From Auanema rhodensis (lineage: Eukaryota > Animalia > Nematoda), in contig OZ059898.1 of NCBI GenBank assembly GCA_964057225.1, forward strand, positions 11,966,001-12,030,000: a DNA stretch of 64,000 bases. Direction: 5' to 3'. Positions 38,077-45,600 of the stretch are shown piece after piece. The notes beneath the pieces were generated by a model, which saw only the letters and a list, made by a program, of their open reading frames with translations, did no database searches and had not been told where the DNA came from. A program made the translations under genes and the position numbers. Numbering within the stretch: the stretch's first letter is position 1; each line of letters begins with the position of its first letter.

Positions 38077-39927
38077 CGATTTTTCATTCATCTTTAGTTC
38101 TCCCATCACATCTTTTCTTTCCGATTTTCTTATAAGCTTACAAGCAGTGTCTGTATTGCTTAACATATTTAACCGTTATATTTCTCTATCTCTCATTGCA
38201 TCTGATCTTGCACTCTTTTCTTTACTTATTCTGTCTTTGGCTCAAACGTTCATATGCAGCATCATTCTGATAAGTTGATGAATTTCCTATAGATTCTATG
38301 TTTACACTCTCCAAGCAGCTTTGAGCTGTCTAACGCATGAGTCTCGTCGCTCAGATGATTCTCGAACGAGTCATACCTGATCGTTCAAACAGTCTCACCG
38401 ATTAGCCAACTGACCACGAGTAGCTCTGGCAAAAGCAAAAAAGAAATCTAAGTAAATGCGAGGGAATGAAGCATTATCTGAAGCAATTGAAAACTTTTCA
38501 TCCGATCTACTATTTCTCTACGAAGAAAAGCTTATTATACAGCAATCAACACGATACACGTGCTTGAACACAAATACTCCATATAATCTTGAACCACTAC
38601 TAATTAGCATGCGCTGACGTCAAAGAAGGTCCGTGTCACGTCGTTTGACATAGACAACAATTTCATTTTTATTGTAGACATCAAGTACAGACAGTTGCTT
38701 TCCCATTTACTCAACACATCAGTCTTTAAATTTGTTATAAAATTGTTTTCGAATAATAAACTGTTCAACCAGTCTTCAAGTTCTACCAGTTACAAAAAAA
38801 AATTTTTTTTCGTCAATTGCTCGGGCCCAAATGCAACAAACACTTTTATTGTCAATAATAAGACAAACAACTCAAAAATTGTAATACGGTACATTCGTTT
38901 TGATTAGAAATGAGGGGACTGGTTTCACAATCATCTATCGCCAAAGTGCCATCTAAGGAATTGAATTTCGTTATTATGTTATTGCAACTGATGTTAGATT
39001 GACTGGTAGGGTACCGTGAGCGTTTGAAAATTGAAAACAACACGGGGAACAGGTTCATAACCTAAATGCAACAACATCATAAGCACAGTAGTACCATTCT
39101 CACAACTGCCTTTACCATGATACATTAGATTAAAACTTTGACAAACTAAGGGTTTGGAATTTTTTGAGTTTCTTTAATCTTCATTAGTAGCCATTTTTCA
39201 TGAGTTCAAAGTCAACCATGTTCTTTTTCACGTTTTAAAAGTCTTTTCATTGTAATCAGCTCAACAGGAAAGATCAGTACAGTCACAGTGCGCCTGAAGC
39301 TGAAAAATACAAGAATCGCTAACAGACTGAACAGATTGGTTCTCGGAATATGTACTTACATGAAAAATACTTTTCCTTGAGCTAAGCCTGTTTTAGGTTT
39401 ATTCACTACTCTGACACAACACGGCAAAACAGCTAGCTCTGAATTCACAAATAAATACTAGACAGCCGGTTTCATTGTGAAAGAGCTGCTTTGGCATGAG
39501 ATCAGTACCTACATAAACATTGAAATATCTATATCAGTAATTTTAAAATCCAGAAAGAAAGGAATTTTCCAAACTTCTAAATATTTGGAGTTCAATCAGA
39601 ATGTTATACAAACAATCAAATTTGAAATTAAATTTTATGAGGGAAAACAGTTCGTATATCACAACTACAGTTCGGAATTCATCTTCAGCGTTGGTTCTGA
39701 TGAGGATAATGATAAACATGAGGTATCAGCTTTACGTTGGAGGAGGAAACGTTGTCGACAGAGATAATCCTGAAAAAGCCGAAATTAGAGGTTTGTAACT
39801 CGTTGGACTTCTAGAAGAGTATGACAGCAAATTTGCCACCAATGTTTATCTAAAACCACTCGTGATTCTGCATTGAACTTAATACAATCACGAGCTATTC
39901 TTATCAATCAATTTGAACAAAAATTAT

Positions 39928-41804
39928 TTAAAACAAGGGACTACATACATCTAATTTCTGGCGATTATCTGACATGAACCAGTCGATCACTTCATCTTCA
40001 TATTCTGATAAAATCAATTCACATTGTTGTTTCAGATGTTGAACCTCAGCACCAACGGAATCCCACATTTCATCTGGTAAACCCAAATCTACCTGAAAAC
40101 TCCAGTTTATTTGATAATTTCCAAAACCTTCAATTGTGGTCCAAACAACAAGTTGATAAGGAGATATAAAGTTAACTATTTGAATTACGATTTCTTCGTT
40201 TAGTTATGCAATAAATTACTCAAATATCATGGAACTCAGTAAAAACTCCCAGATTGAGGCCATATCTTCCTTCTATACCGTACCACAAATGTGTACATGT
40301 ATGTGTGGACAATGAACAAGTAAATTGCACAATACCATAATTGACAGTCCAAAAAACAACATTTGCGATAGATGAAGCGGAAAGCCGCAAGTAAAATAAG
40401 CTTTGCGGAAAGGAGACGCAGATGAATCGCCTAGTGAAACTGGTTCAGCAATAGCCACAGGCGCGAGAAGTCCATTATAACATCATAATAATACCAGACA
40501 GGACTTCAACAATCAAACCACTTTGAATCTCATTCCAAACATCAAGATGAGGGACTTAATTCCCAATTTTGGTCTGGCTGATAACCTGATGTTAGTAGTA
40601 TCATTTTAGATGCTTGTCCAGTTGTTTTTTTATATGATACGCATACGGATAACAGACCGCGTTATCATAAAATCTGTTTGGCTGCTCCGGTACACAATAC
40701 GAAGAACACAGTGCTTATGTCACTGTTTTGAGACCAACAGGATTCTTTTAGAGGCTCAACATAGAGCCAAAACTAGTTAAAAGGTAAACTTCAAAATACC
40801 GGATTCAAAAAAATCTGTTGTTCTAGACAATCTAATGTCTACATAACAGTTTTGCCATTTGGCAAGGATGTCAATTCATACAAACAATTTATGATAATTT
40901 ATGAAAATTTTCAATTGGTTTTGCAATTGCATTTCCATGATCCAAATTTCAAAATGATGATGTTGGACTTGGAAATTAGAAGAGAGGACTTTGCGATTGG
41001 TCAGACCGGTCTAAACCAGAAGGTAAGAGATGCGTAATTGAGGTGCGGATGACATCGCCAAACGCGCCACTGGACACGCATATGCGGCATGAACCTGGTT
41101 TTGCGTTATTGGACATGACTAGTATGCGAAAAAGGGCACGATGAGCCAATTAACTTGTCAAACTGTTTCCTGAATGGTTCGTTACAGTTCAGAAGTTCTC
41201 TAACTTTACTAGAATTTTTCACCGAGGGAACATCAATTCTATCCAACAGAGCTTTGAGTATAATTAATCGAACTTGATCAAACATCCAACCTTTACACCT
41301 TGTGCCCGCAGTTTTTTCAATGTCTTCATAGTTTCACTTTCTTCTTTAGCAAACCGCTGAAGACCAATTTTCTCTTTATGAACCTGTAAGCAAGGTTTTC
41401 AACTTGGTCCAAAATAATGTTGATGATACCTTATATACCAACATAACATTACAAAAATCTTGAATAGCATCTAGAATTTCAGATTCAGATTTCTGAAGGT
41501 AGTTTTTCTTTTGTTGATATCTTTATAATTTTACATACCGTATACAAACGAGAAGCTTTATTCTCTATTTCTCGAGCAAAAACTGCACAAGATTCACAAG
41601 GTGTAGGAGGCTCTACATCGCTATAGTCATTAGATAAACCACAAGATATAAAAGAAAAGAGCAATCTATGAAATTATGCTTAGGTTAATGAGATAATTTT
41701 TGAGTTTGAACATACAAACATTGAACAAATTTGGAAAAGTTATTCAGACTTGGGAGAGTCTTGCTCCATCGGCTCATCTCCATCATCTGTGGCGAATGGA
41801 ACAT
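39928..41804 (-). CDS. Canopy (CNPY3/4-like) saposin-B ER chaperone protein; 3' end uncertain
   Basis: Contains PTPCESCAVFAREIE, KSESEILDAIQDFC, VHKEKIGLQRFAKEESETMKTLKKLRAQGVK and VDLGLPDEMWDSVGAEVQHLKQQCELILSEYEDEVIDWF, matching the CNPY3/4 pattern (RYAKG.SETF.TL..L..KGVKV...IP.ELW). Exon 1 (41804-41716) lies in the +1 frame of the mdt-31 last exon, followed by a 50-nt intron (41715-41666). Confidence 0.85.
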
Positions 41805-42476
41805 CGCAGTCTACAACTTCAGCTTGCTCCTAGAAATATGTTTTCAATATCTGAAACACTAAAAGGTGAACTAACGTATAATCTCTGTCTCTTTCTCAAG
41901 TAGTACTGCCACTGCAAGACTTGTTGATCCTCAATAAACTTAGCTGTGGCTCCTTAAAAATAAATTGAAGTAACGCTGGACACTTTACGAAATTACCTGC
42001 TTCTATAGCTTCACGGAACTCAGGTTCTTGAATGGCTTCGAGAAAATGAAGACACTGTGGATATTTGAGAGTTCTGAAATATGATGAATAATAATAAAAC
42101 TATTATGACTTTAAAAGGTAATTACAAACCTTGCGTATTCAGGTCTTTTCCAATATAATAAATATTTCAAATAATTAATGAAATATTCTTCTTTGAAATG
42201 TCCTCTTTGAGCCAAGTCTGTAAAAAAATTATTTTGAGCGTATTGTAATGAAACCTACAATTCAGGTAGTGGGGATTAGCTAAAGCTTGTACAAACTCGC
42301 ACTCAATTTCAAACCGTCTTCTTTGTTCCTCAGGAGGCTCTAGCTGAGCAGTAGAAACAGCTAAAACAATCAAATAATGATAATTTAAAATAAAACTTAC
42401 TCTGCCTGTAATCCAGTTTGAAAATGAGTAGAAGCTTACCAGCTCAACTGAATGAATCAGGAAATTAATATCACAT
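41740..42476 (-). CDS. mdt-31: Mediator subunit 31 (SOH1/MED31); start codon uncertain
   Basis: Contains RRRFEIECEFVQALANPHYLN-YLAQRGHFKEEYFINYLKYLLYWKRPEYAR-TLKYPQCLHFLEAIQ...KFIEDQQVLQWQYYLRKRQRLY. The last exon (41829-41740) ends EQDSPKSE*. Confidence 0.93.
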
Positions 42477-42645
42477 GATATAGGGAAATTAAAATATTAT
42501 TGGATATAATAGTAACCATTTGCTTTTAAATAAATATAATAATAAAAAGGATTTATTTGCATTCACAGGAAAATGAGATTCATTATGAGCAATAATAAAG
42601 TAGTGCATAGTCGTAATGTATGAAGACATCAAAAAAAAAGTGAGA

Positions 42646-45600
42646 TCAATATTCGACATCATCATCATCTTCCAAATTGTCGGAAGCTTGTTGATTTTTA
42701 ATTTGGTCTTGATTATTGTACATTGTGGCAACTTGATCAGCAGTAGTAGCATCTTCTCCTTTTTTATCATCTCTGAAAAATAAATAGAGATATCTCAAAA
42801 TTTTAGGCAAAATTTTACCTTATATGTAAAAAGCGAGGGAATCGAAGAGAGATACCTTTCTCCTTATCTACGAGACCTCTAGCAGCCAAATGTCTTGGAG
42901 AGATTGAAAGATCAGCACATTTGACCTAAAAAAAAATGTTTTGTTGATGAAAACCCACGCAGTTTGGCTATATTCCAAACTCCAAGACGAGCTCATTTTC
43001 AAATGCATTGTACCACATAACGGTTGTGCTAAGAAAAAAACCAAAACTGACCTCGAATACAACCTCTGGATCAAACCATACATCAGGTTTCAAAGTCTCG
43101 TCGTAAGCAAAATACGAACGGGGCTAAAAAATAATACTTACTTGAGCCATGAAACAAAACTAACTTTTTCTATAATATGTTTTGATAATATTTCATGTTG
43201 AACTTTCAAATCAGCATCAGAGAATCCTGTTCCTATCTTACAAATAGTTTGGTATTCTTCATTAGTTTGGTCATAACAAGCTAGGAGATAACCACCATAC
43301 ACTCCGGTACGTTTTCCTAAAACTAGACTGAAAAGAAGAAAAGCATATAAGGTCTACCTGTTCCAAAAAATGCACCGATAACTACCAAGTCAAGAGTATC
43401 GCCAACGCCATCAAGATAATCTTTCTTTAATTTCAACCAATTATGAGATCTCTTGGCTATTTCATATGAAGCATTTTCGTCTAAGGTTTTGACCATAAGA
43501 CCTTCACAGTTGCCCTGAAGTTAGTATATGAATGAAGAGGCATACATATATAATCAAGCCTTGATAGCTTCTTCTAAGAAAACATTAATTTCATCAGTAT
43601 CTGTTGAATCTAAATTAGTTGCAAAATGGAAAAGACCTTCAATCATCTGAAAAAAAAATTCAGTTACTTTTCATTTTGAAAAAAAACTCGCCTTGAAGTT
43701 ATCACGAAGGGTAGTTCTTCGTTGGCGGAATGATTTGGTTACCAAAGGTTCTCCATTGAAATACAGGAGATCGAAGAGAAAAACACATACTTTTACTTTA
43801 ATTTCAGATTCACCAGCATTCTGAACTTGGATTTTATTTAAAACTAGATACTTCCGAGTTTTCCGACCTTTCTTTTTCTTGTGGTTAAAACTTGGAAAGG
43901 AAGAATAGATTTTTTTTCTACATCCCAAGCAACAATTTCAGCATCAGCAATAAAGCTTTCAACCTGCTCAGACATGCATTGCCGAATCTAAACAATTTCT
44001 ATATCGCGATTCTCCCATAGAATAACTCACATTTTCGATTATATCTGGATACTTAGAAGTATTGTTTTCCTGGTTTCTACTGTAAATAAACACATCTCCA
44101 TTAGGACTCATGTGAATCTAGAAAATATATAATTATATGGAGCTACAGATGGTCTATTAATACCTGTCCTCTTTCGCCATCGTATTTCCACTCACATGCA
44201 AACTCAGCTTCTCCAAACCGTTTAGTAATTTCGGAAATTCCTTTTGTAGGATGGGCTAACATAGGCTTGAGTGGAACGCCTGAAACAACGATAAAAGATT
44301 TAATTTCAATATGTGAATATACCAGGAGTAAGTTTGCATTTTTCTGATATGTGATCAAGTCCCTCTTCAAGAGCAACTTTAAGAATCTTATCATAATTCG
44401 GACATTGGCTATACAAACAGACTAATTACGACATCAATAGTTGATTGAACATACCAATATGTTGTCTTCAATGTGAGCACATCCGAAGCTTTCATATCGT
44501 CAAGCTTAGCAGATGCAAGTTTCAAGCCTATTGAATAATTATACTAAAGAAAAATAATATATATGAATATACCTTCTTTACGTATCCTATGATTTGTGAA
44601 AGCATTACCCAACGCAACAAGTACACTTTGCTCAGCCAAACCAATTCTAAGTTTACCTTGAACAAAGAAATCTGATAACTTTTCAAATATATAAGGAATA
44701 CCTCCAAGCGAACGTACCAAGAAACGAGCTTCAGAATCACGGCATGCAACAATTAGTCCTTGAATCATTTGCACTTTTTTGTTCATAGCCTTAAGTTCAC
44801 AAAATATTTAAAATTAGTTTTAGCCTTACATTTGCTCCCGAAAGTTTTGCTATTTGAGTAAGCTTCGAGAAAACTGCTTGCACAGTTAAAGGTGCAGGTT
44901 TAAAAAGAGTTTTTTGGTTTGTTCGAGACTGCTGTGCAACAATACCCAAATCTCCTTTTATGTTCAGATCTTCTTTAATTTTATCCATGTTTCTTCCAGT
45001 TGCTAATCCTACTGCCTGGAATGAACTATCTCCTATCCAAAATTTGAAAACTGTTACTTTGATTAAAGAATTTTCGGCGATTCCCAACTCCAATCCTTCG
45101 TATGCAGGACCCAATTGATTCACACAAAGATACACACAAGCTGCCAAATCTTGCGGTGATAAAGTCATAACTTTACCAAAAAACTTAGCGAGAATTTCAA
45201 TAATTTTGAGCCTAAAATTTCATAAAACAAAGAACGACTAATACTTAAATACCTTGAGCTTTCATCTTCAATTTTTTCAAGAGTTTTGGAAAATGCCAGA
45301 TATGGAACTCTACAATGAACAATTTCGTCAACATTTAGAAAAAATAACCAACTTGTCTCCCTCATTCCATTCTAGTTCTTTGTCAACATTTGTTTTTGAA
45401 GCAAACATAACTTTAACTTTTTTAGGTTTAGCAAGTTTAGTTGTTGTTAACTGAAATAAAGCTTAACAGAATTTAATGAATGCACACACTGCACTTGAGA
45501 ATCTGCTGTGATTTTTTTCTTAGCAGAAGGAAAATGAGAAATATGTAGTTCTTGCAGGCAAAAAAAAGAACCAAGGTGATATCTTGGCCTTATATAAGGC

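What the first reader, a model, noticed from the sequence alone, without database searches (positions are those of the whole stretch)
41666..41829. Dual-coding shared exon: the mdt-31 last exon also encodes the start of the Canopy-like gene in the +1 frame
Seen: the Canopy-like exon starting at 41665 has no in-frame ATG (TAA lies just upstream). A strong GTATGT donor at 41715, 24 nt after the mdt-31 stop, and a 50-nt intron join it in frame to the +1 frame of the mdt-31 terminal exon. That frame has four ATGs (41804, 41786, 41783, 41777), each formed by an Asp codon GAT plus G in MED31, and 41804 is the first AUG after the exon acceptor at 41829. The product MFHSPQMMEMSRWSKTLPSLNNFSKFVQCL|LLFSFISCGLS-NDYSDVEPPTPCESC has the signal peptide an ER-lumen saposin protein needs. 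The two CDSs overlap by up to 65 nt, with no spacer or poly(A) signal between them. Inference: either one 3' splice site is used for cis-splicing (MED31 mRNA) or SL trans-splicing (CNPY mRNA) in a mutually exclusive way, or a single bicistronic mRNA is translated by re-initiation. In the bicistronic case the MED31 stop would sit upstream of several introns and could be NMD-sensitive. This differs from the usual ~100-bp-spaced SL2 operon.
Basis: partly seen in the sequence, partly recalled or inferred. Interest (0 to 1): 0.85.

Follow-up and report, generated by a model that had tools for sequence, protein, structure and literature searches.

The report
MED31 and Canopy share one mRNA
In this nematode the Mediator subunit MED31 and an ER Canopy-like protein lie on one spliced RNA with overlapping reading frames, and because MED31 has no AUG while the first AUG of the RNA opens the Canopy frame, both are probably translated from one messenger by leaky scanning, which is unusual for an animal that normally cuts multi-gene transcripts apart.

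Summary
All coordinates hold. Spliced RNA contigs from four runs of one study remove the 50-nt intron 41715-41666. They join the MED31 terminal exon (41829-41716) to the Canopy/DUF3456 exon at 41665.

New evidence changes the reading:
- MED31 has no AUG. An in-frame TGA lies 1 nt after the 5' acceptor at 42447. The only good start is CUG 42416 (aaaCUGg), which aligns with the AUG start of a strongylid MED31.
- The spliced RNA has no AUG in any frame for 418 nt. Its first AUG is 41804, the Canopy start. The genomic ATG-free gap of 672 nt is the longest in the window.
- The ligase-MED31-Canopy arrangement occurs in Auanema, Pristionchus, Diploscapter, Toxocara and Ascaris. MED31 and Canopy also share RNA contigs in a filarial and another nematode. 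In all six species with a reconstructed or assembled RNA, the first productive AUG is in the Canopy frame.
- Nematodes in which MED31 was found without the ligase or Canopy next to it have a normal AUG start; in the two counted, AUG density is ordinary.

Best explanation (about 0.6): one bicistronic, dual-coding mRNA. MED31 starts at CUG and Canopy at the first AUG by leaky scanning.

SL trans-splicing at 41829 is not excluded. Re-initiation is unlikely. No single-molecule or translation data were available. I found no paper describing this locus.

The parts
42552..42648 (-). End of the upstream DNA ligase I-like gene: stop codon 42648-42646 and AATAAA at 42557-42552. The gene body runs up to about 47555.
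   Evidence: ORF list. Collinear tblastn matches to the Auanema JU1783 ligase gene. AATAAA position. RNA contigs of this gene end at 42561-42610.
42401..42449 (-). MED31 exon 1. The acceptor is ttcattcag|TTGAGC, so the exon starts at 42447. The RNA contigs begin at 42449. It holds no ATG and has an in-frame TGA at 42446-42444.
   Evidence: Three runs' contigs all start at 42449 and splice 42401 to 42360. Sequence and frame table. That 42447 is an SL trans-splice site is an inference from the acceptor, from the shared AG, and from the ~90-nt distance to the ligase poly(A) signal.
42414..42416 (-). CUG in the context ttcaaaCUGg: the proposed MED31 initiation codon.
   Evidence: It is the only near-cognate codon with A at -3 and G at +4 between the in-frame TGA and the Med31 domain. 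The same AAA CTG GAY is present in Auanema JU1783 and Pristionchus. CTG GAT is also found in Toxocara and in a filarial contig. It aligns with ATG ATG GAT TAC of Parelaphostrongylus.
41876..42360 (-). MED31 exons 2-5: 42360-42259, 42217-42130, 42073-41997 and 41952-41876. They encode the Med31 domain.
   Evidence: All introns are removed in the RNA contigs. Pfam PF05669 hits. No ATG in any frame.
41805..42473 (-). ATG-free stretch. Genomic ATG-to-ATG distance from 42476 to 41804 is 672 nt. The spliced leader is 418 nt.
   Evidence: Longest ATG-free gap on either strand of the 64-kb window. Only 5 of 5000 dinucleotide shuffles of the spliced leader reach zero ATG.
41716..41829 (-). Shared dual-coding exon. 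Frame 0 is the MED31 acidic tail, ending in TAA at 41742-41740. Frame +1 is the Canopy N-terminus, with AUGs at 41804, 41786, 41783 and 41777.
   Evidence: Joints on both sides lie in the same RNA contig. The frame-0 tail is conserved with Auanema JU1783: it begins EQAEVV and ends PK-S/T-E-stop.
41666..41715 (-). 50-nt intron (GTATGT...CATAG) downstream of the MED31 stop. It links the shared exon to the Canopy signal-peptide exon.
   Evidence: Joint 41665/41716, skipping 50 nt with CT..AC ends, in all four runs. The equivalent intron is present in Auanema JU1783 and Pristionchus fissidentatus and absent in Toxocara canis.
39665..41665 (-). Remaining Canopy/DUF3456 exons: 41665-41539, 41492-41430, 41383-41291, 40092-39949 and 39769-39665. 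The stop codon is 39667-39665.
   Evidence: Spliced translation is open for 206 codons and ends in NSEL. All joints are in the RNA contigs. PF11938 hit.
39398..39403 (-). AATAAA: the only canonical poly(A) signal found downstream of MED31 for the joint RNA.
   Evidence: The longest contig (X4, 1282 nt) runs about 178 nt past 39600.

Best explanation
MED31 and the Canopy-like ER protein are made from one mature, bicistronic, dual-coding mRNA.

How the RNA is made:
- It is the second unit of a ligase-MED31-Canopy cluster.
- Its 5' end is formed at the acceptor at 42447, probably by SL trans-splicing (inferred).
- It is cis-spliced through all MED31 and Canopy introns, including the 50-nt intron after the MED31 stop (shown by contigs).
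- It is polyadenylated only after Canopy (inferred).

How it is translated:
- Scanning ribosomes first meet CUG 42416 in an optimal context. A minority start there and make MED31.
- The rest scan on through about 385 nt that evolution has kept free of AUG.
- They start at the first AUG, 41804, or at the in-frame AUGs just after it. These lie in the +1 frame of the MED31 tail and open the Canopy pre-protein with its signal peptide.

The ratio of the two proteins would be set by the strength of the CUG. Translation itself, and the presence of both ORFs on single molecules, are inferred and not shown.
For: 1. RNA structure. In each of four runs, one spliced contig runs from 42449 through every MED31 intron, the shared exon, the 41716/41665 joint and all Canopy exons. 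No poly(A) hexamer follows the MED31 stop.

2. MED31 cannot start at AUG. An in-frame TGA lies at 42446-42444, right after the acceptor. No ATG occurs in any frame until 41804. Yet MED31 is under strong purifying selection: pN is 0.028 with saturated pS against Auanema JU1783, and Pfam hits are clear.

3. The CUG aligns with a real AUG. Window AAA CTG GAT TAC matches Parelaphostrongylus ATG ATG GAT TAC. AAA CTG GAY is conserved in Auanema and Pristionchus. Several independent annotations start MED31 at CTG or TTG or flag it as partial.

4. AUG desert.
- The 672-nt genomic gap is the longest in the window.
- Only 5 of 5000 shuffles of the spliced leader reach zero ATG.
- After 41804 there is one ATG about every 33 nt.
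- ATG counts in the MED31 core are 0 in the window, Auanema, Pristionchus and Diploscapter.
- The counts are 5 and 5 in Parelaphostrongylus and Mesorhabditis, where Canopy is not adjacent.

5. First AUG in the Canopy frame. This holds in all six species with a reconstructed or assembled RNA: the window, Auanema JU1783, Pristionchus, Toxocara, and the RNA contigs L002 and L010. Apart from an ATG-TGA start-stop, the first AUG is always in the Canopy frame and open into Canopy. In Auanema that AUG is created by the MED31 exon 5/6 junction. It therefore exists only on the cis-spliced bicistronic RNA, and it precedes two strong MED31-frame AUGs that would otherwise block Canopy.

6. Conservation. 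The order ligase-MED31-Canopy is found in clades III and V. RNA contigs of two other nematodes also carry both ORFs.
Against: - De Bruijn contigs cannot prove that both ORFs sit on the same molecule. A short SL branch at 41829 or a poly(A) branch after 41740 would be clipped during assembly.
- No raw reads, SL evidence, ribosome profiling or peptide data could be obtained.
- With the protein fixed, synonymous-site depletion of ATG is only marginal per species (P 0.06-0.18). Only 5 residue pairs could encode an off-frame ATG.
- Toxocara and the filarial contig each have one long out-of-frame AUG ORF before the Canopy signal-peptide AUG.
- L002 has TTG, not CTG, at the aligned position.
- No stabilising hairpin follows the CUG.
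- Diploscapter has a poly(A) signal and an acceptor between the two genes. That looks like ordinary operon processing.
Confidence: 0.6

Rival explanations
1. Alternative use of one 3' splice site. The acceptor at 41829 is either cis-spliced to MED31 exon 5, giving MED31 mRNA, or SL trans-spliced, giving a monocistronic Canopy mRNA that starts with the shared exon. Canopy would then come mainly from the trans-spliced form. This could coexist with leaky scanning.
For: - Nematodes resolve polycistronic precursors by SL trans-splicing (established knowledge).
- The cluster already looks like an operon at the ligase-MED31 junction.
- 41829 is the only acceptor upstream of the Canopy AUGs, and 41804 would be the first AUG of such an mRNA too.
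- Assembly would hide a 22-nt SL branch (notes).
- Diploscapter has an acceptor just upstream of Canopy.
Against: - It does not explain why MED31 lost its AUG, or why about 400 nt of MED31 coding sequence are AUG-free in four clade V species while separated MED31 genes are not.
- Trans-splicing at 41829 would leave MED31 without its last exon and without any poly(A) signal.
- In Auanema JU1783 an SL-exon 6 mRNA would present two strong MED31-frame AUGs before a weak Canopy AUG. The junction AUG that bypasses them exists only after cis-splicing.
Confidence: 0.25
2. Termination-reinitiation. Ribosomes translate MED31, terminate at 41740, and the 40S subunit moves back or onward to a Canopy AUG.
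For: - Both ORFs are on one contig.
- In Pristionchus the Canopy AUG lies only 8 nt after the MED31 stop on the spliced RNA.
- The overlap is 26 nt in three species.
Against: - Re-initiation after a ~150-codon ORF is inefficient in eukaryotes (established knowledge).
- Here the AUGs lie 38-65 nt upstream of the stop.
- It does not explain the missing MED31 AUG or the AUG desert.
- Canopy output would be capped by weak CUG initiation.
Confidence: 0.04
3. There is no true sharing. MED31 has an unseen AUG-containing first exon or a second normal gene copy. Or Canopy starts elsewhere, and the joined contig is a minor read-through product.
For: - The RNA evidence is contigs from a single study.
- Contig 5' ends may be incomplete.
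- I could not search the rest of this genome for a second MED31.
Against: - Three runs end at the same base, next to a good acceptor about 90 nt after the ligase poly(A) signal.
- Any upstream exon joined at 42447 meets TGA in the MED31 frame.
- The Canopy exon at 41665 has TAA just upstream and no in-frame ATG.
- The same lack of ATG and the same linkage recur in Auanema, Pristionchus, Toxocara and in two independent RNA assemblies.
Confidence: 0.08

Closest known systems
Rice tungro bacilliform virus pregenomic RNA (ORF I-II-III leaky scanning)
   Same: The first ORF starts at a non-AUG codon (AUU). A long stretch, about 895 nt, is kept free of other AUGs, so ribosomes scan on to a downstream ORF (PMC3542737).
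   Different: It is a plant pararetrovirus. Its ORFs are consecutive, and ribosome shunting is involved. Here two conserved cellular genes of an animal are involved, the message is spliced, and the ORFs overlap by 65 nt.
Human POLG/POLGARF dual-coding mRNA
   Same: A CUG in a strong context starts the upstream frame, and the AUG-initiated ORF is reached by ribosomes that leak past it. The paper calls it a rare genuine bicistronic animal mRNA (PMC10742948).
   Different: - POLGARF is a young overlapping ORF inside POLG, 53 nt before its AUG.
- It has a uORF and a stem-loop. No hairpin is found here.
- Here the CUG-initiated ORF is the ancient, universally conserved gene.
- The scan distance here is about 385 nt, and the overlap is only at the ORF ends.
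Nematode operons: SL2-type, and SL1-type without an intercistronic region (Williams, Xu and Blumenthal 1999, cited from memory)
   Same: The genes form a co-oriented cluster transcribed together. The ligase-MED31 junction has the classical spacing of about 90-100 nt.
   Different: - In operons each gene ends with its own 3' end, and the ORFs do not overlap.
- Here MED31 has no poly(A) signal.
- The Canopy AUG lies inside the MED31 CDS.
- An intron lies downstream of the MED31 stop.
Polycistronic mRNAs of green algae
   Same: Two full-size proteins are made from one capped mRNA. The ratio is tunable by the upstream start context, which is consistent with leaky scanning (PMC7896298).
   Different: The algal upstream ORFs use AUG, and the ORFs are mostly separated. 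The lineage also has no trans-splicing alternative.

Membership tests
Med31 / SOH1 (PF05669) | Match to the Med31 domain profile above the gathering score | tested here: met
   Three exons score 29.6, 34.7 and 25.3 bits against a cut-off of 25. Together they cover profile positions 2-75 of 95. The protein is 82% identical to Auanema JU1783 MED31.
Canopy / DUF3456 (PF11938), saposin-like ER protein | DUF3456 profile match, paired CxxC cysteines, an N-terminal signal peptide and a C-terminal ER-retrieval-like tail | tested here: met
   - Exon 40092-39949 scores 31.9 bits against a cut-off of 21.1.
- A CESC motif and a C-terminal NSEL are present in the spliced product.
- The hydrophobic core was judged by eye only, after the +1-frame AUGs. 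No signal-peptide predictor was available.
Classical SL2-type operon junction (for MED31-Canopy) | The upstream gene has its own poly(A) signal and 3' end, followed by an intercistronic region of about 100 nt before the trans-splice site | tested here: not met
   There is no canonical hexamer after the MED31 stop. The ORFs overlap by 65 nt. The RNA contigs run through.
Classical SL2-type operon junction (for MED31-Canopy) | SL2-family leader on the downstream mRNA | not testable with these tools
SL1-type operon (no intercistronic region) | The cleavage site of the upstream gene directly abuts the trans-splice site of the downstream gene, and the ORFs are separate | tested here: not met
   The Canopy AUGs lie upstream of the MED31 stop. 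The only acceptor before them is the cis acceptor of MED31's last intron.
Leaky-scanning bicistronic / dual-coding mRNA | Both ORFs on one mature mRNA | tested here: inconclusive
   Single spliced contigs span both ORFs in four runs and in two other nematodes. Contigs cannot prove single molecules.
Leaky-scanning bicistronic / dual-coding mRNA | The upstream ORF has a weak or non-AUG start | tested here: met
   There is no AUG between the in-frame TGA at 42446 and the Med31 domain. The CUG at 42416 is conserved and aligns with an AUG start in a strongylid.
Leaky-scanning bicistronic / dual-coding mRNA | No AUG between the 5' end and the downstream start | tested here: met
   The spliced RNA has 418 nt without ATG, and 41804 is the first AUG. 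The same rule holds in five other species, allowing for an ATG-TGA start-stop.
Leaky-scanning bicistronic / dual-coding mRNA | Both proteins shown to be translated from that mRNA | not testable with these tools
   This needs ribosome profiling, N-terminal proteomics or reporters.

The most novel reading that the evidence does not exclude
Nematodes of clades III and V have kept an unresolved bicistronic mRNA since their common ancestor. On it, an essential Mediator subunit is made only from a CUG codon, and an ER Canopy chaperone is made from the first AUG by leaky scanning, with the two reading frames overlapping in a shared exon. This would be a cellular animal counterpart of the RTBV strategy, in a phylum thought to handle polycistrons solely by trans-splicing. 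When the genes separate, MED31 regains an AUG.
Probability: 0.5. Interest if true: 0.85.

Novelty: new variant of a known kind. Interest (0 to 1): 0.78.

Why it matters
If confirmed, it would matter in four ways.
- It would show that nematode gene clusters are not always resolved into monocistronic mRNAs. Two conserved, unrelated housekeeping proteins could be translationally coupled on one message.
- It would add a second well-defined animal case of obligatory CUG initiation of a full-size conserved protein, after POLGARF.
- It offers a natural evolutionary experiment: an AUG desert and a CUG start when the genes are linked, and an AUG start with ordinary AUG density when they are apart.
- In practice it explains a recurrent annotation error. 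MED31-DUF3456 proteins are fused in Toxocara and Ascaris. A Heterorhabditis model reads MED31 exons out of frame. MED31 is flagged partial, or starts at CTG/TTG, in Pristionchus, Wuchereria, Haemonchus, Angiostrongylus and Auanema.

Tried and rejected
Alternative starts for MED31, rejected:
- An SL-donated start. With the canonical nematode SL1 (sequence from memory), the MED31 frame meets TGA at 42446-42444. In Auanema it meets a TAA inside the SL.
- An upstream micro-exon ending in ATG at 42519. Spliced to 42447 it gives ATG TTG AGC TGG TAA, which is out of frame and stops.
- Retention of the last MED31 intron. This ends MED31 at TGA about 41821 (…LGAS*). The contigs show the intron removed.

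Tests that added little:
- A hairpin after the CUG, as in POLGARF. Folding the 60 nt after the CUG in three species gave z-scores from -0.2 to +0.6.
- ATG-free MED31 introns as a signal. The window has none, but Auanema introns do contain ATG (GTATGT donors), so this part of the 672-nt gap may be chance.
- In-frame Met loss (CLHMLE to CLHFLE) as a marker. It is also absent in Steinernema and the strongylids, which lack the linkage, so it is not diagnostic.
- Synonymous-codon resampling. It is only marginal per species.

Searches that gave little:
- The search for homologous proteins with the Auanema Canopy protein found only itself.
- The Toxocara (UniRef form) and Heterorhabditis proteins are not on record as genes, so no DNA was available.
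- Papers: no hit for Med31+DUF3456 or mdt-31+operon, and no nematode leaky-scanning bicistron was found.
- The search of earlier findings gave nothing relevant.

Steps left out: spliced full-length proteins of the window have no reference, so they were not typed into the database tools.
Full report
**Observation.**
All features below are on the minus strand.
- The window carries a DNA ligase I-like gene (about 47555-42646), then MED31, then a Canopy/DUF3456 gene.
- The MED31 exons are 42447-42401, 42360-42259, 42217-42130, 42073-41997, 41952-41876 and 41829-41740. The stop is TAA at 41742-41740.
- The Canopy exons are 41804-41716, 41665-41539, 41492-41430, 41383-41291, 40092-39949 and 39769-39665.
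The GTATGT donor is at 41715, 24 nt after the stop. The intron is 50 nt. The four +1-frame ATGs are each GAT+G. The overlap is 65 nt. A TAA precedes the ATG-less exon at 41665.
- Pfam confirms Med31 on three exons and DUF3456 on exon 40092-39949.

**RNA evidence.**
- Four runs from one study hold this stretch as Logan contigs. The contigs lack all ten to eleven GT-AG introns, so they derive from spliced RNA.
- In each run, one contig joins MED31 exon 5 to 41828, joins 41716 to 41665, and continues through all Canopy exons.
- In three runs the contig begins at exactly 42449. That is 2 nt into the acceptor ttcattcag|TTGAGC.
- There are no differences from the window, so an indel artefact is excluded.
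- The ligase contigs end at 42561-42610, and AATAAA lies at 42557. This gives a classical operon spacing of about 90 nt to 42447.
- No poly(A) hexamer follows the MED31 stop. The next AATAAA is at 39403, after Canopy.
- Limits: contigs cannot prove single molecules, and a short SL or poly(A) branch could have been clipped.

- In the MED31 frame, a TGA lies at 42446-42444, immediately after the acceptor.
- The spliced RNA then has no ATG in any frame for 418 nt. The first is 41804, the Canopy start. After it, ATG recurs about every 33 nt.
- On the genome, the ATG-free gap from 42476 to 41804 is 672 nt. It is the longest on either strand of the window; the next is 468 nt.
- Only 5 of 5000 dinucleotide-preserving shuffles of the spliced leader have zero ATG.
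- MED31 is nevertheless under strong purifying selection: pN is 0.028 with saturated pS against Auanema sp. JU1783. So it must be translated, and from a non-AUG codon.
- The only near-cognate codon in a strong context is CUG 42416 (ttcaaaCUGg).

**Comparative evidence.** A profile-free search with one Canopy exon, followed by look-ups, gave orthologous loci.
- The order ligase-MED31-Canopy is present in Auanema sp. JU1783 (L001), Diploscapter pachys (L006) and Pristionchus fissidentatus (L008). In Pristionchus the two annotated genes overlap.
- Toxocara canis (L005) and Ascaris lumbricoides are annotated as fused Med31+DUF3456 proteins.
- A Heterorhabditis model reads the MED31 exons out of frame in order to reach Canopy.
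- RNA contigs of an unidentified nematode (L002, L003) and of a filarial worm (L010) carry both ORFs.
- Canopy in Caenorhabditis sp. 36 (L004) lies after an AAA-ATPase gene, with no MED31 nearby.
- MED31 in Mesorhabditis belari (L009, intronless) and in Steinernema hermaphroditum (L011) lies beside other genes.
- In Parelaphostrongylus tenuis (L007), Canopy is not found within 6 kb downstream of MED31.

**MED31 start codon across species.**
- The Auanema annotation starts MED31 at CTG, the Toxocara model at CTG, and the Pristionchus model at TTG (partial). MED31 entries from Wuchereria, Haemonchus and Angiostrongylus are flagged partial.
- AAA CTG GAY is conserved in the window, Auanema and Pristionchus. 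CTG GAT is present in Toxocara (L005:5666) and in the filarial contig. L002 has TTG GAT at this place.
- In Parelaphostrongylus the aligned codons are ATG ATG GAT TAC.

**ATG counts in the MED31 core.**

| Species | Canopy linkage | ATG in core |
|---|---|---|
| Window | overlapping | 0 |
| Auanema JU1783 | overlapping | 0 |
| Pristionchus | shared exon | 0 |
| Diploscapter | adjacent, spaced | 0 |
| L002 contig | overlapping | 2 |
| Toxocara | overlapping | 3 |
| Parelaphostrongylus | not adjacent | 5 |
| Mesorhabditis | not adjacent | 5 |

**First productive AUG.**
- In every linked species with a reconstructed or assembled RNA, the first AUG other than an ATG-TGA start-stop is in the Canopy frame and open into Canopy. 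The start-stop lies in the Glu-Cys-Glu codons.
- In Auanema this AUG is formed by the exon 5/6 junction. It therefore exists only after cis-splicing, and it precedes two strong MED31-frame AUGs.
- In Pristionchus the shared exon has no ATG at all. The Canopy AUG lies 8 nt after the MED31 stop on the spliced RNA.

**Interpretation.**
- The simplest model that explains all of this is a bicistronic, dual-coding mRNA: MED31 from CUG, and Canopy from the first AUG by leaky scanning.
- Re-initiation is unlikely, because the Canopy AUGs lie upstream of the MED31 stop and the ORF is long.
- SL trans-splicing at 41829 could still supply part or most of the Canopy mRNA. But it explains neither the lost AUG, nor the AUG desert, nor the Auanema junction AUG. 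It would also leave MED31 without a 3' end.

**Weak points.**
- Synonymous-site depletion alone is marginal (P 0.06-0.18 per species). Only 5 residue pairs could encode an off-frame ATG.
- The clade III species keep one long out-of-frame AUG ORF.
- Diploscapter looks like a conventional operon junction.
- No hairpin follows the CUG.

**Known parallels.**
- RTBV has an AUU start and about 895 nt without AUG (PMC3542737).
- POLG/POLGARF has a CUG start followed by a leaky AUG (PMC10742948).
- Green-algal polycistrons are a further parallel (PMC7896298).
- No paper on MED31 with DUF3456/Canopy, or on a leaky-scanning bicistron in nematodes, was found.

**Taxon.** The nearest available relative is Auanema sp. 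JU1783. MED31 is 82% and Canopy 59.5% identical at the protein level. The window is therefore a rhabditid nematode, but it is not that species.

Noticed in passing
window 40170-40640 and 40879-41167 (inside the 1198-nt Canopy intron 41290-40093): Low-depth RNA contigs lie inside the big intron. One has its own 43-nt minus-strand GT-AG intron (41053-41011). The region is richer in G+C than its surroundings and has no second copy in the window. It may be a nested small transcript or an old insertion.
   Followed up: partly
window 42447-42648: The ligase-MED31 junction looks like a classical operon junction: stop at 42648-42646, AATAAA at 42557, and an acceptor at 42447, about 90 nt after the expected cleavage site. 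The cluster would then be an ordinary operon junction followed by an unresolved bicistron.
   Followed up: partly
L005 (Toxocara canis UYWY01000035), P0081 (Ascaris lumbricoides), P0005 (Heterorhabditis bacteriophora): Public gene models at this locus are wrong in a consistent way. Toxocara and Ascaris have fused Med31+DUF3456 proteins. The Heterorhabditis model translates the MED31 exons in the +1 frame to find an ATG for Canopy.
   Followed up: yes
L001:5886-5911, L005:7756-7781, L002:441-466: The overlap between the Canopy signal-peptide AUG and the MED31 stop is exactly 26 nt in Auanema JU1783, Toxocara canis and the L002 species. It is 65 nt in the window, about 68 nt in the filarial contig and -8 nt in Pristionchus. 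The repeated 26 is unexplained.
   Followed up: no
L005:6060-6065, L002:127-132, L010:190-195: In the clade III species the Glu-Cys-Glu codons of MED31 read GAATGTGAA. This creates an out-of-frame ATG-TGA start-stop. The clade V species use GAG TGY and avoid it.
   Followed up: partly
L009:6001-6384 (Mesorhabditis belari): MED31 here is intronless. It has an ATG start and lies next to a thioredoxin-domain gene instead of the ligase and Canopy. It looks like a retrogene-style relocation.
   Followed up: no
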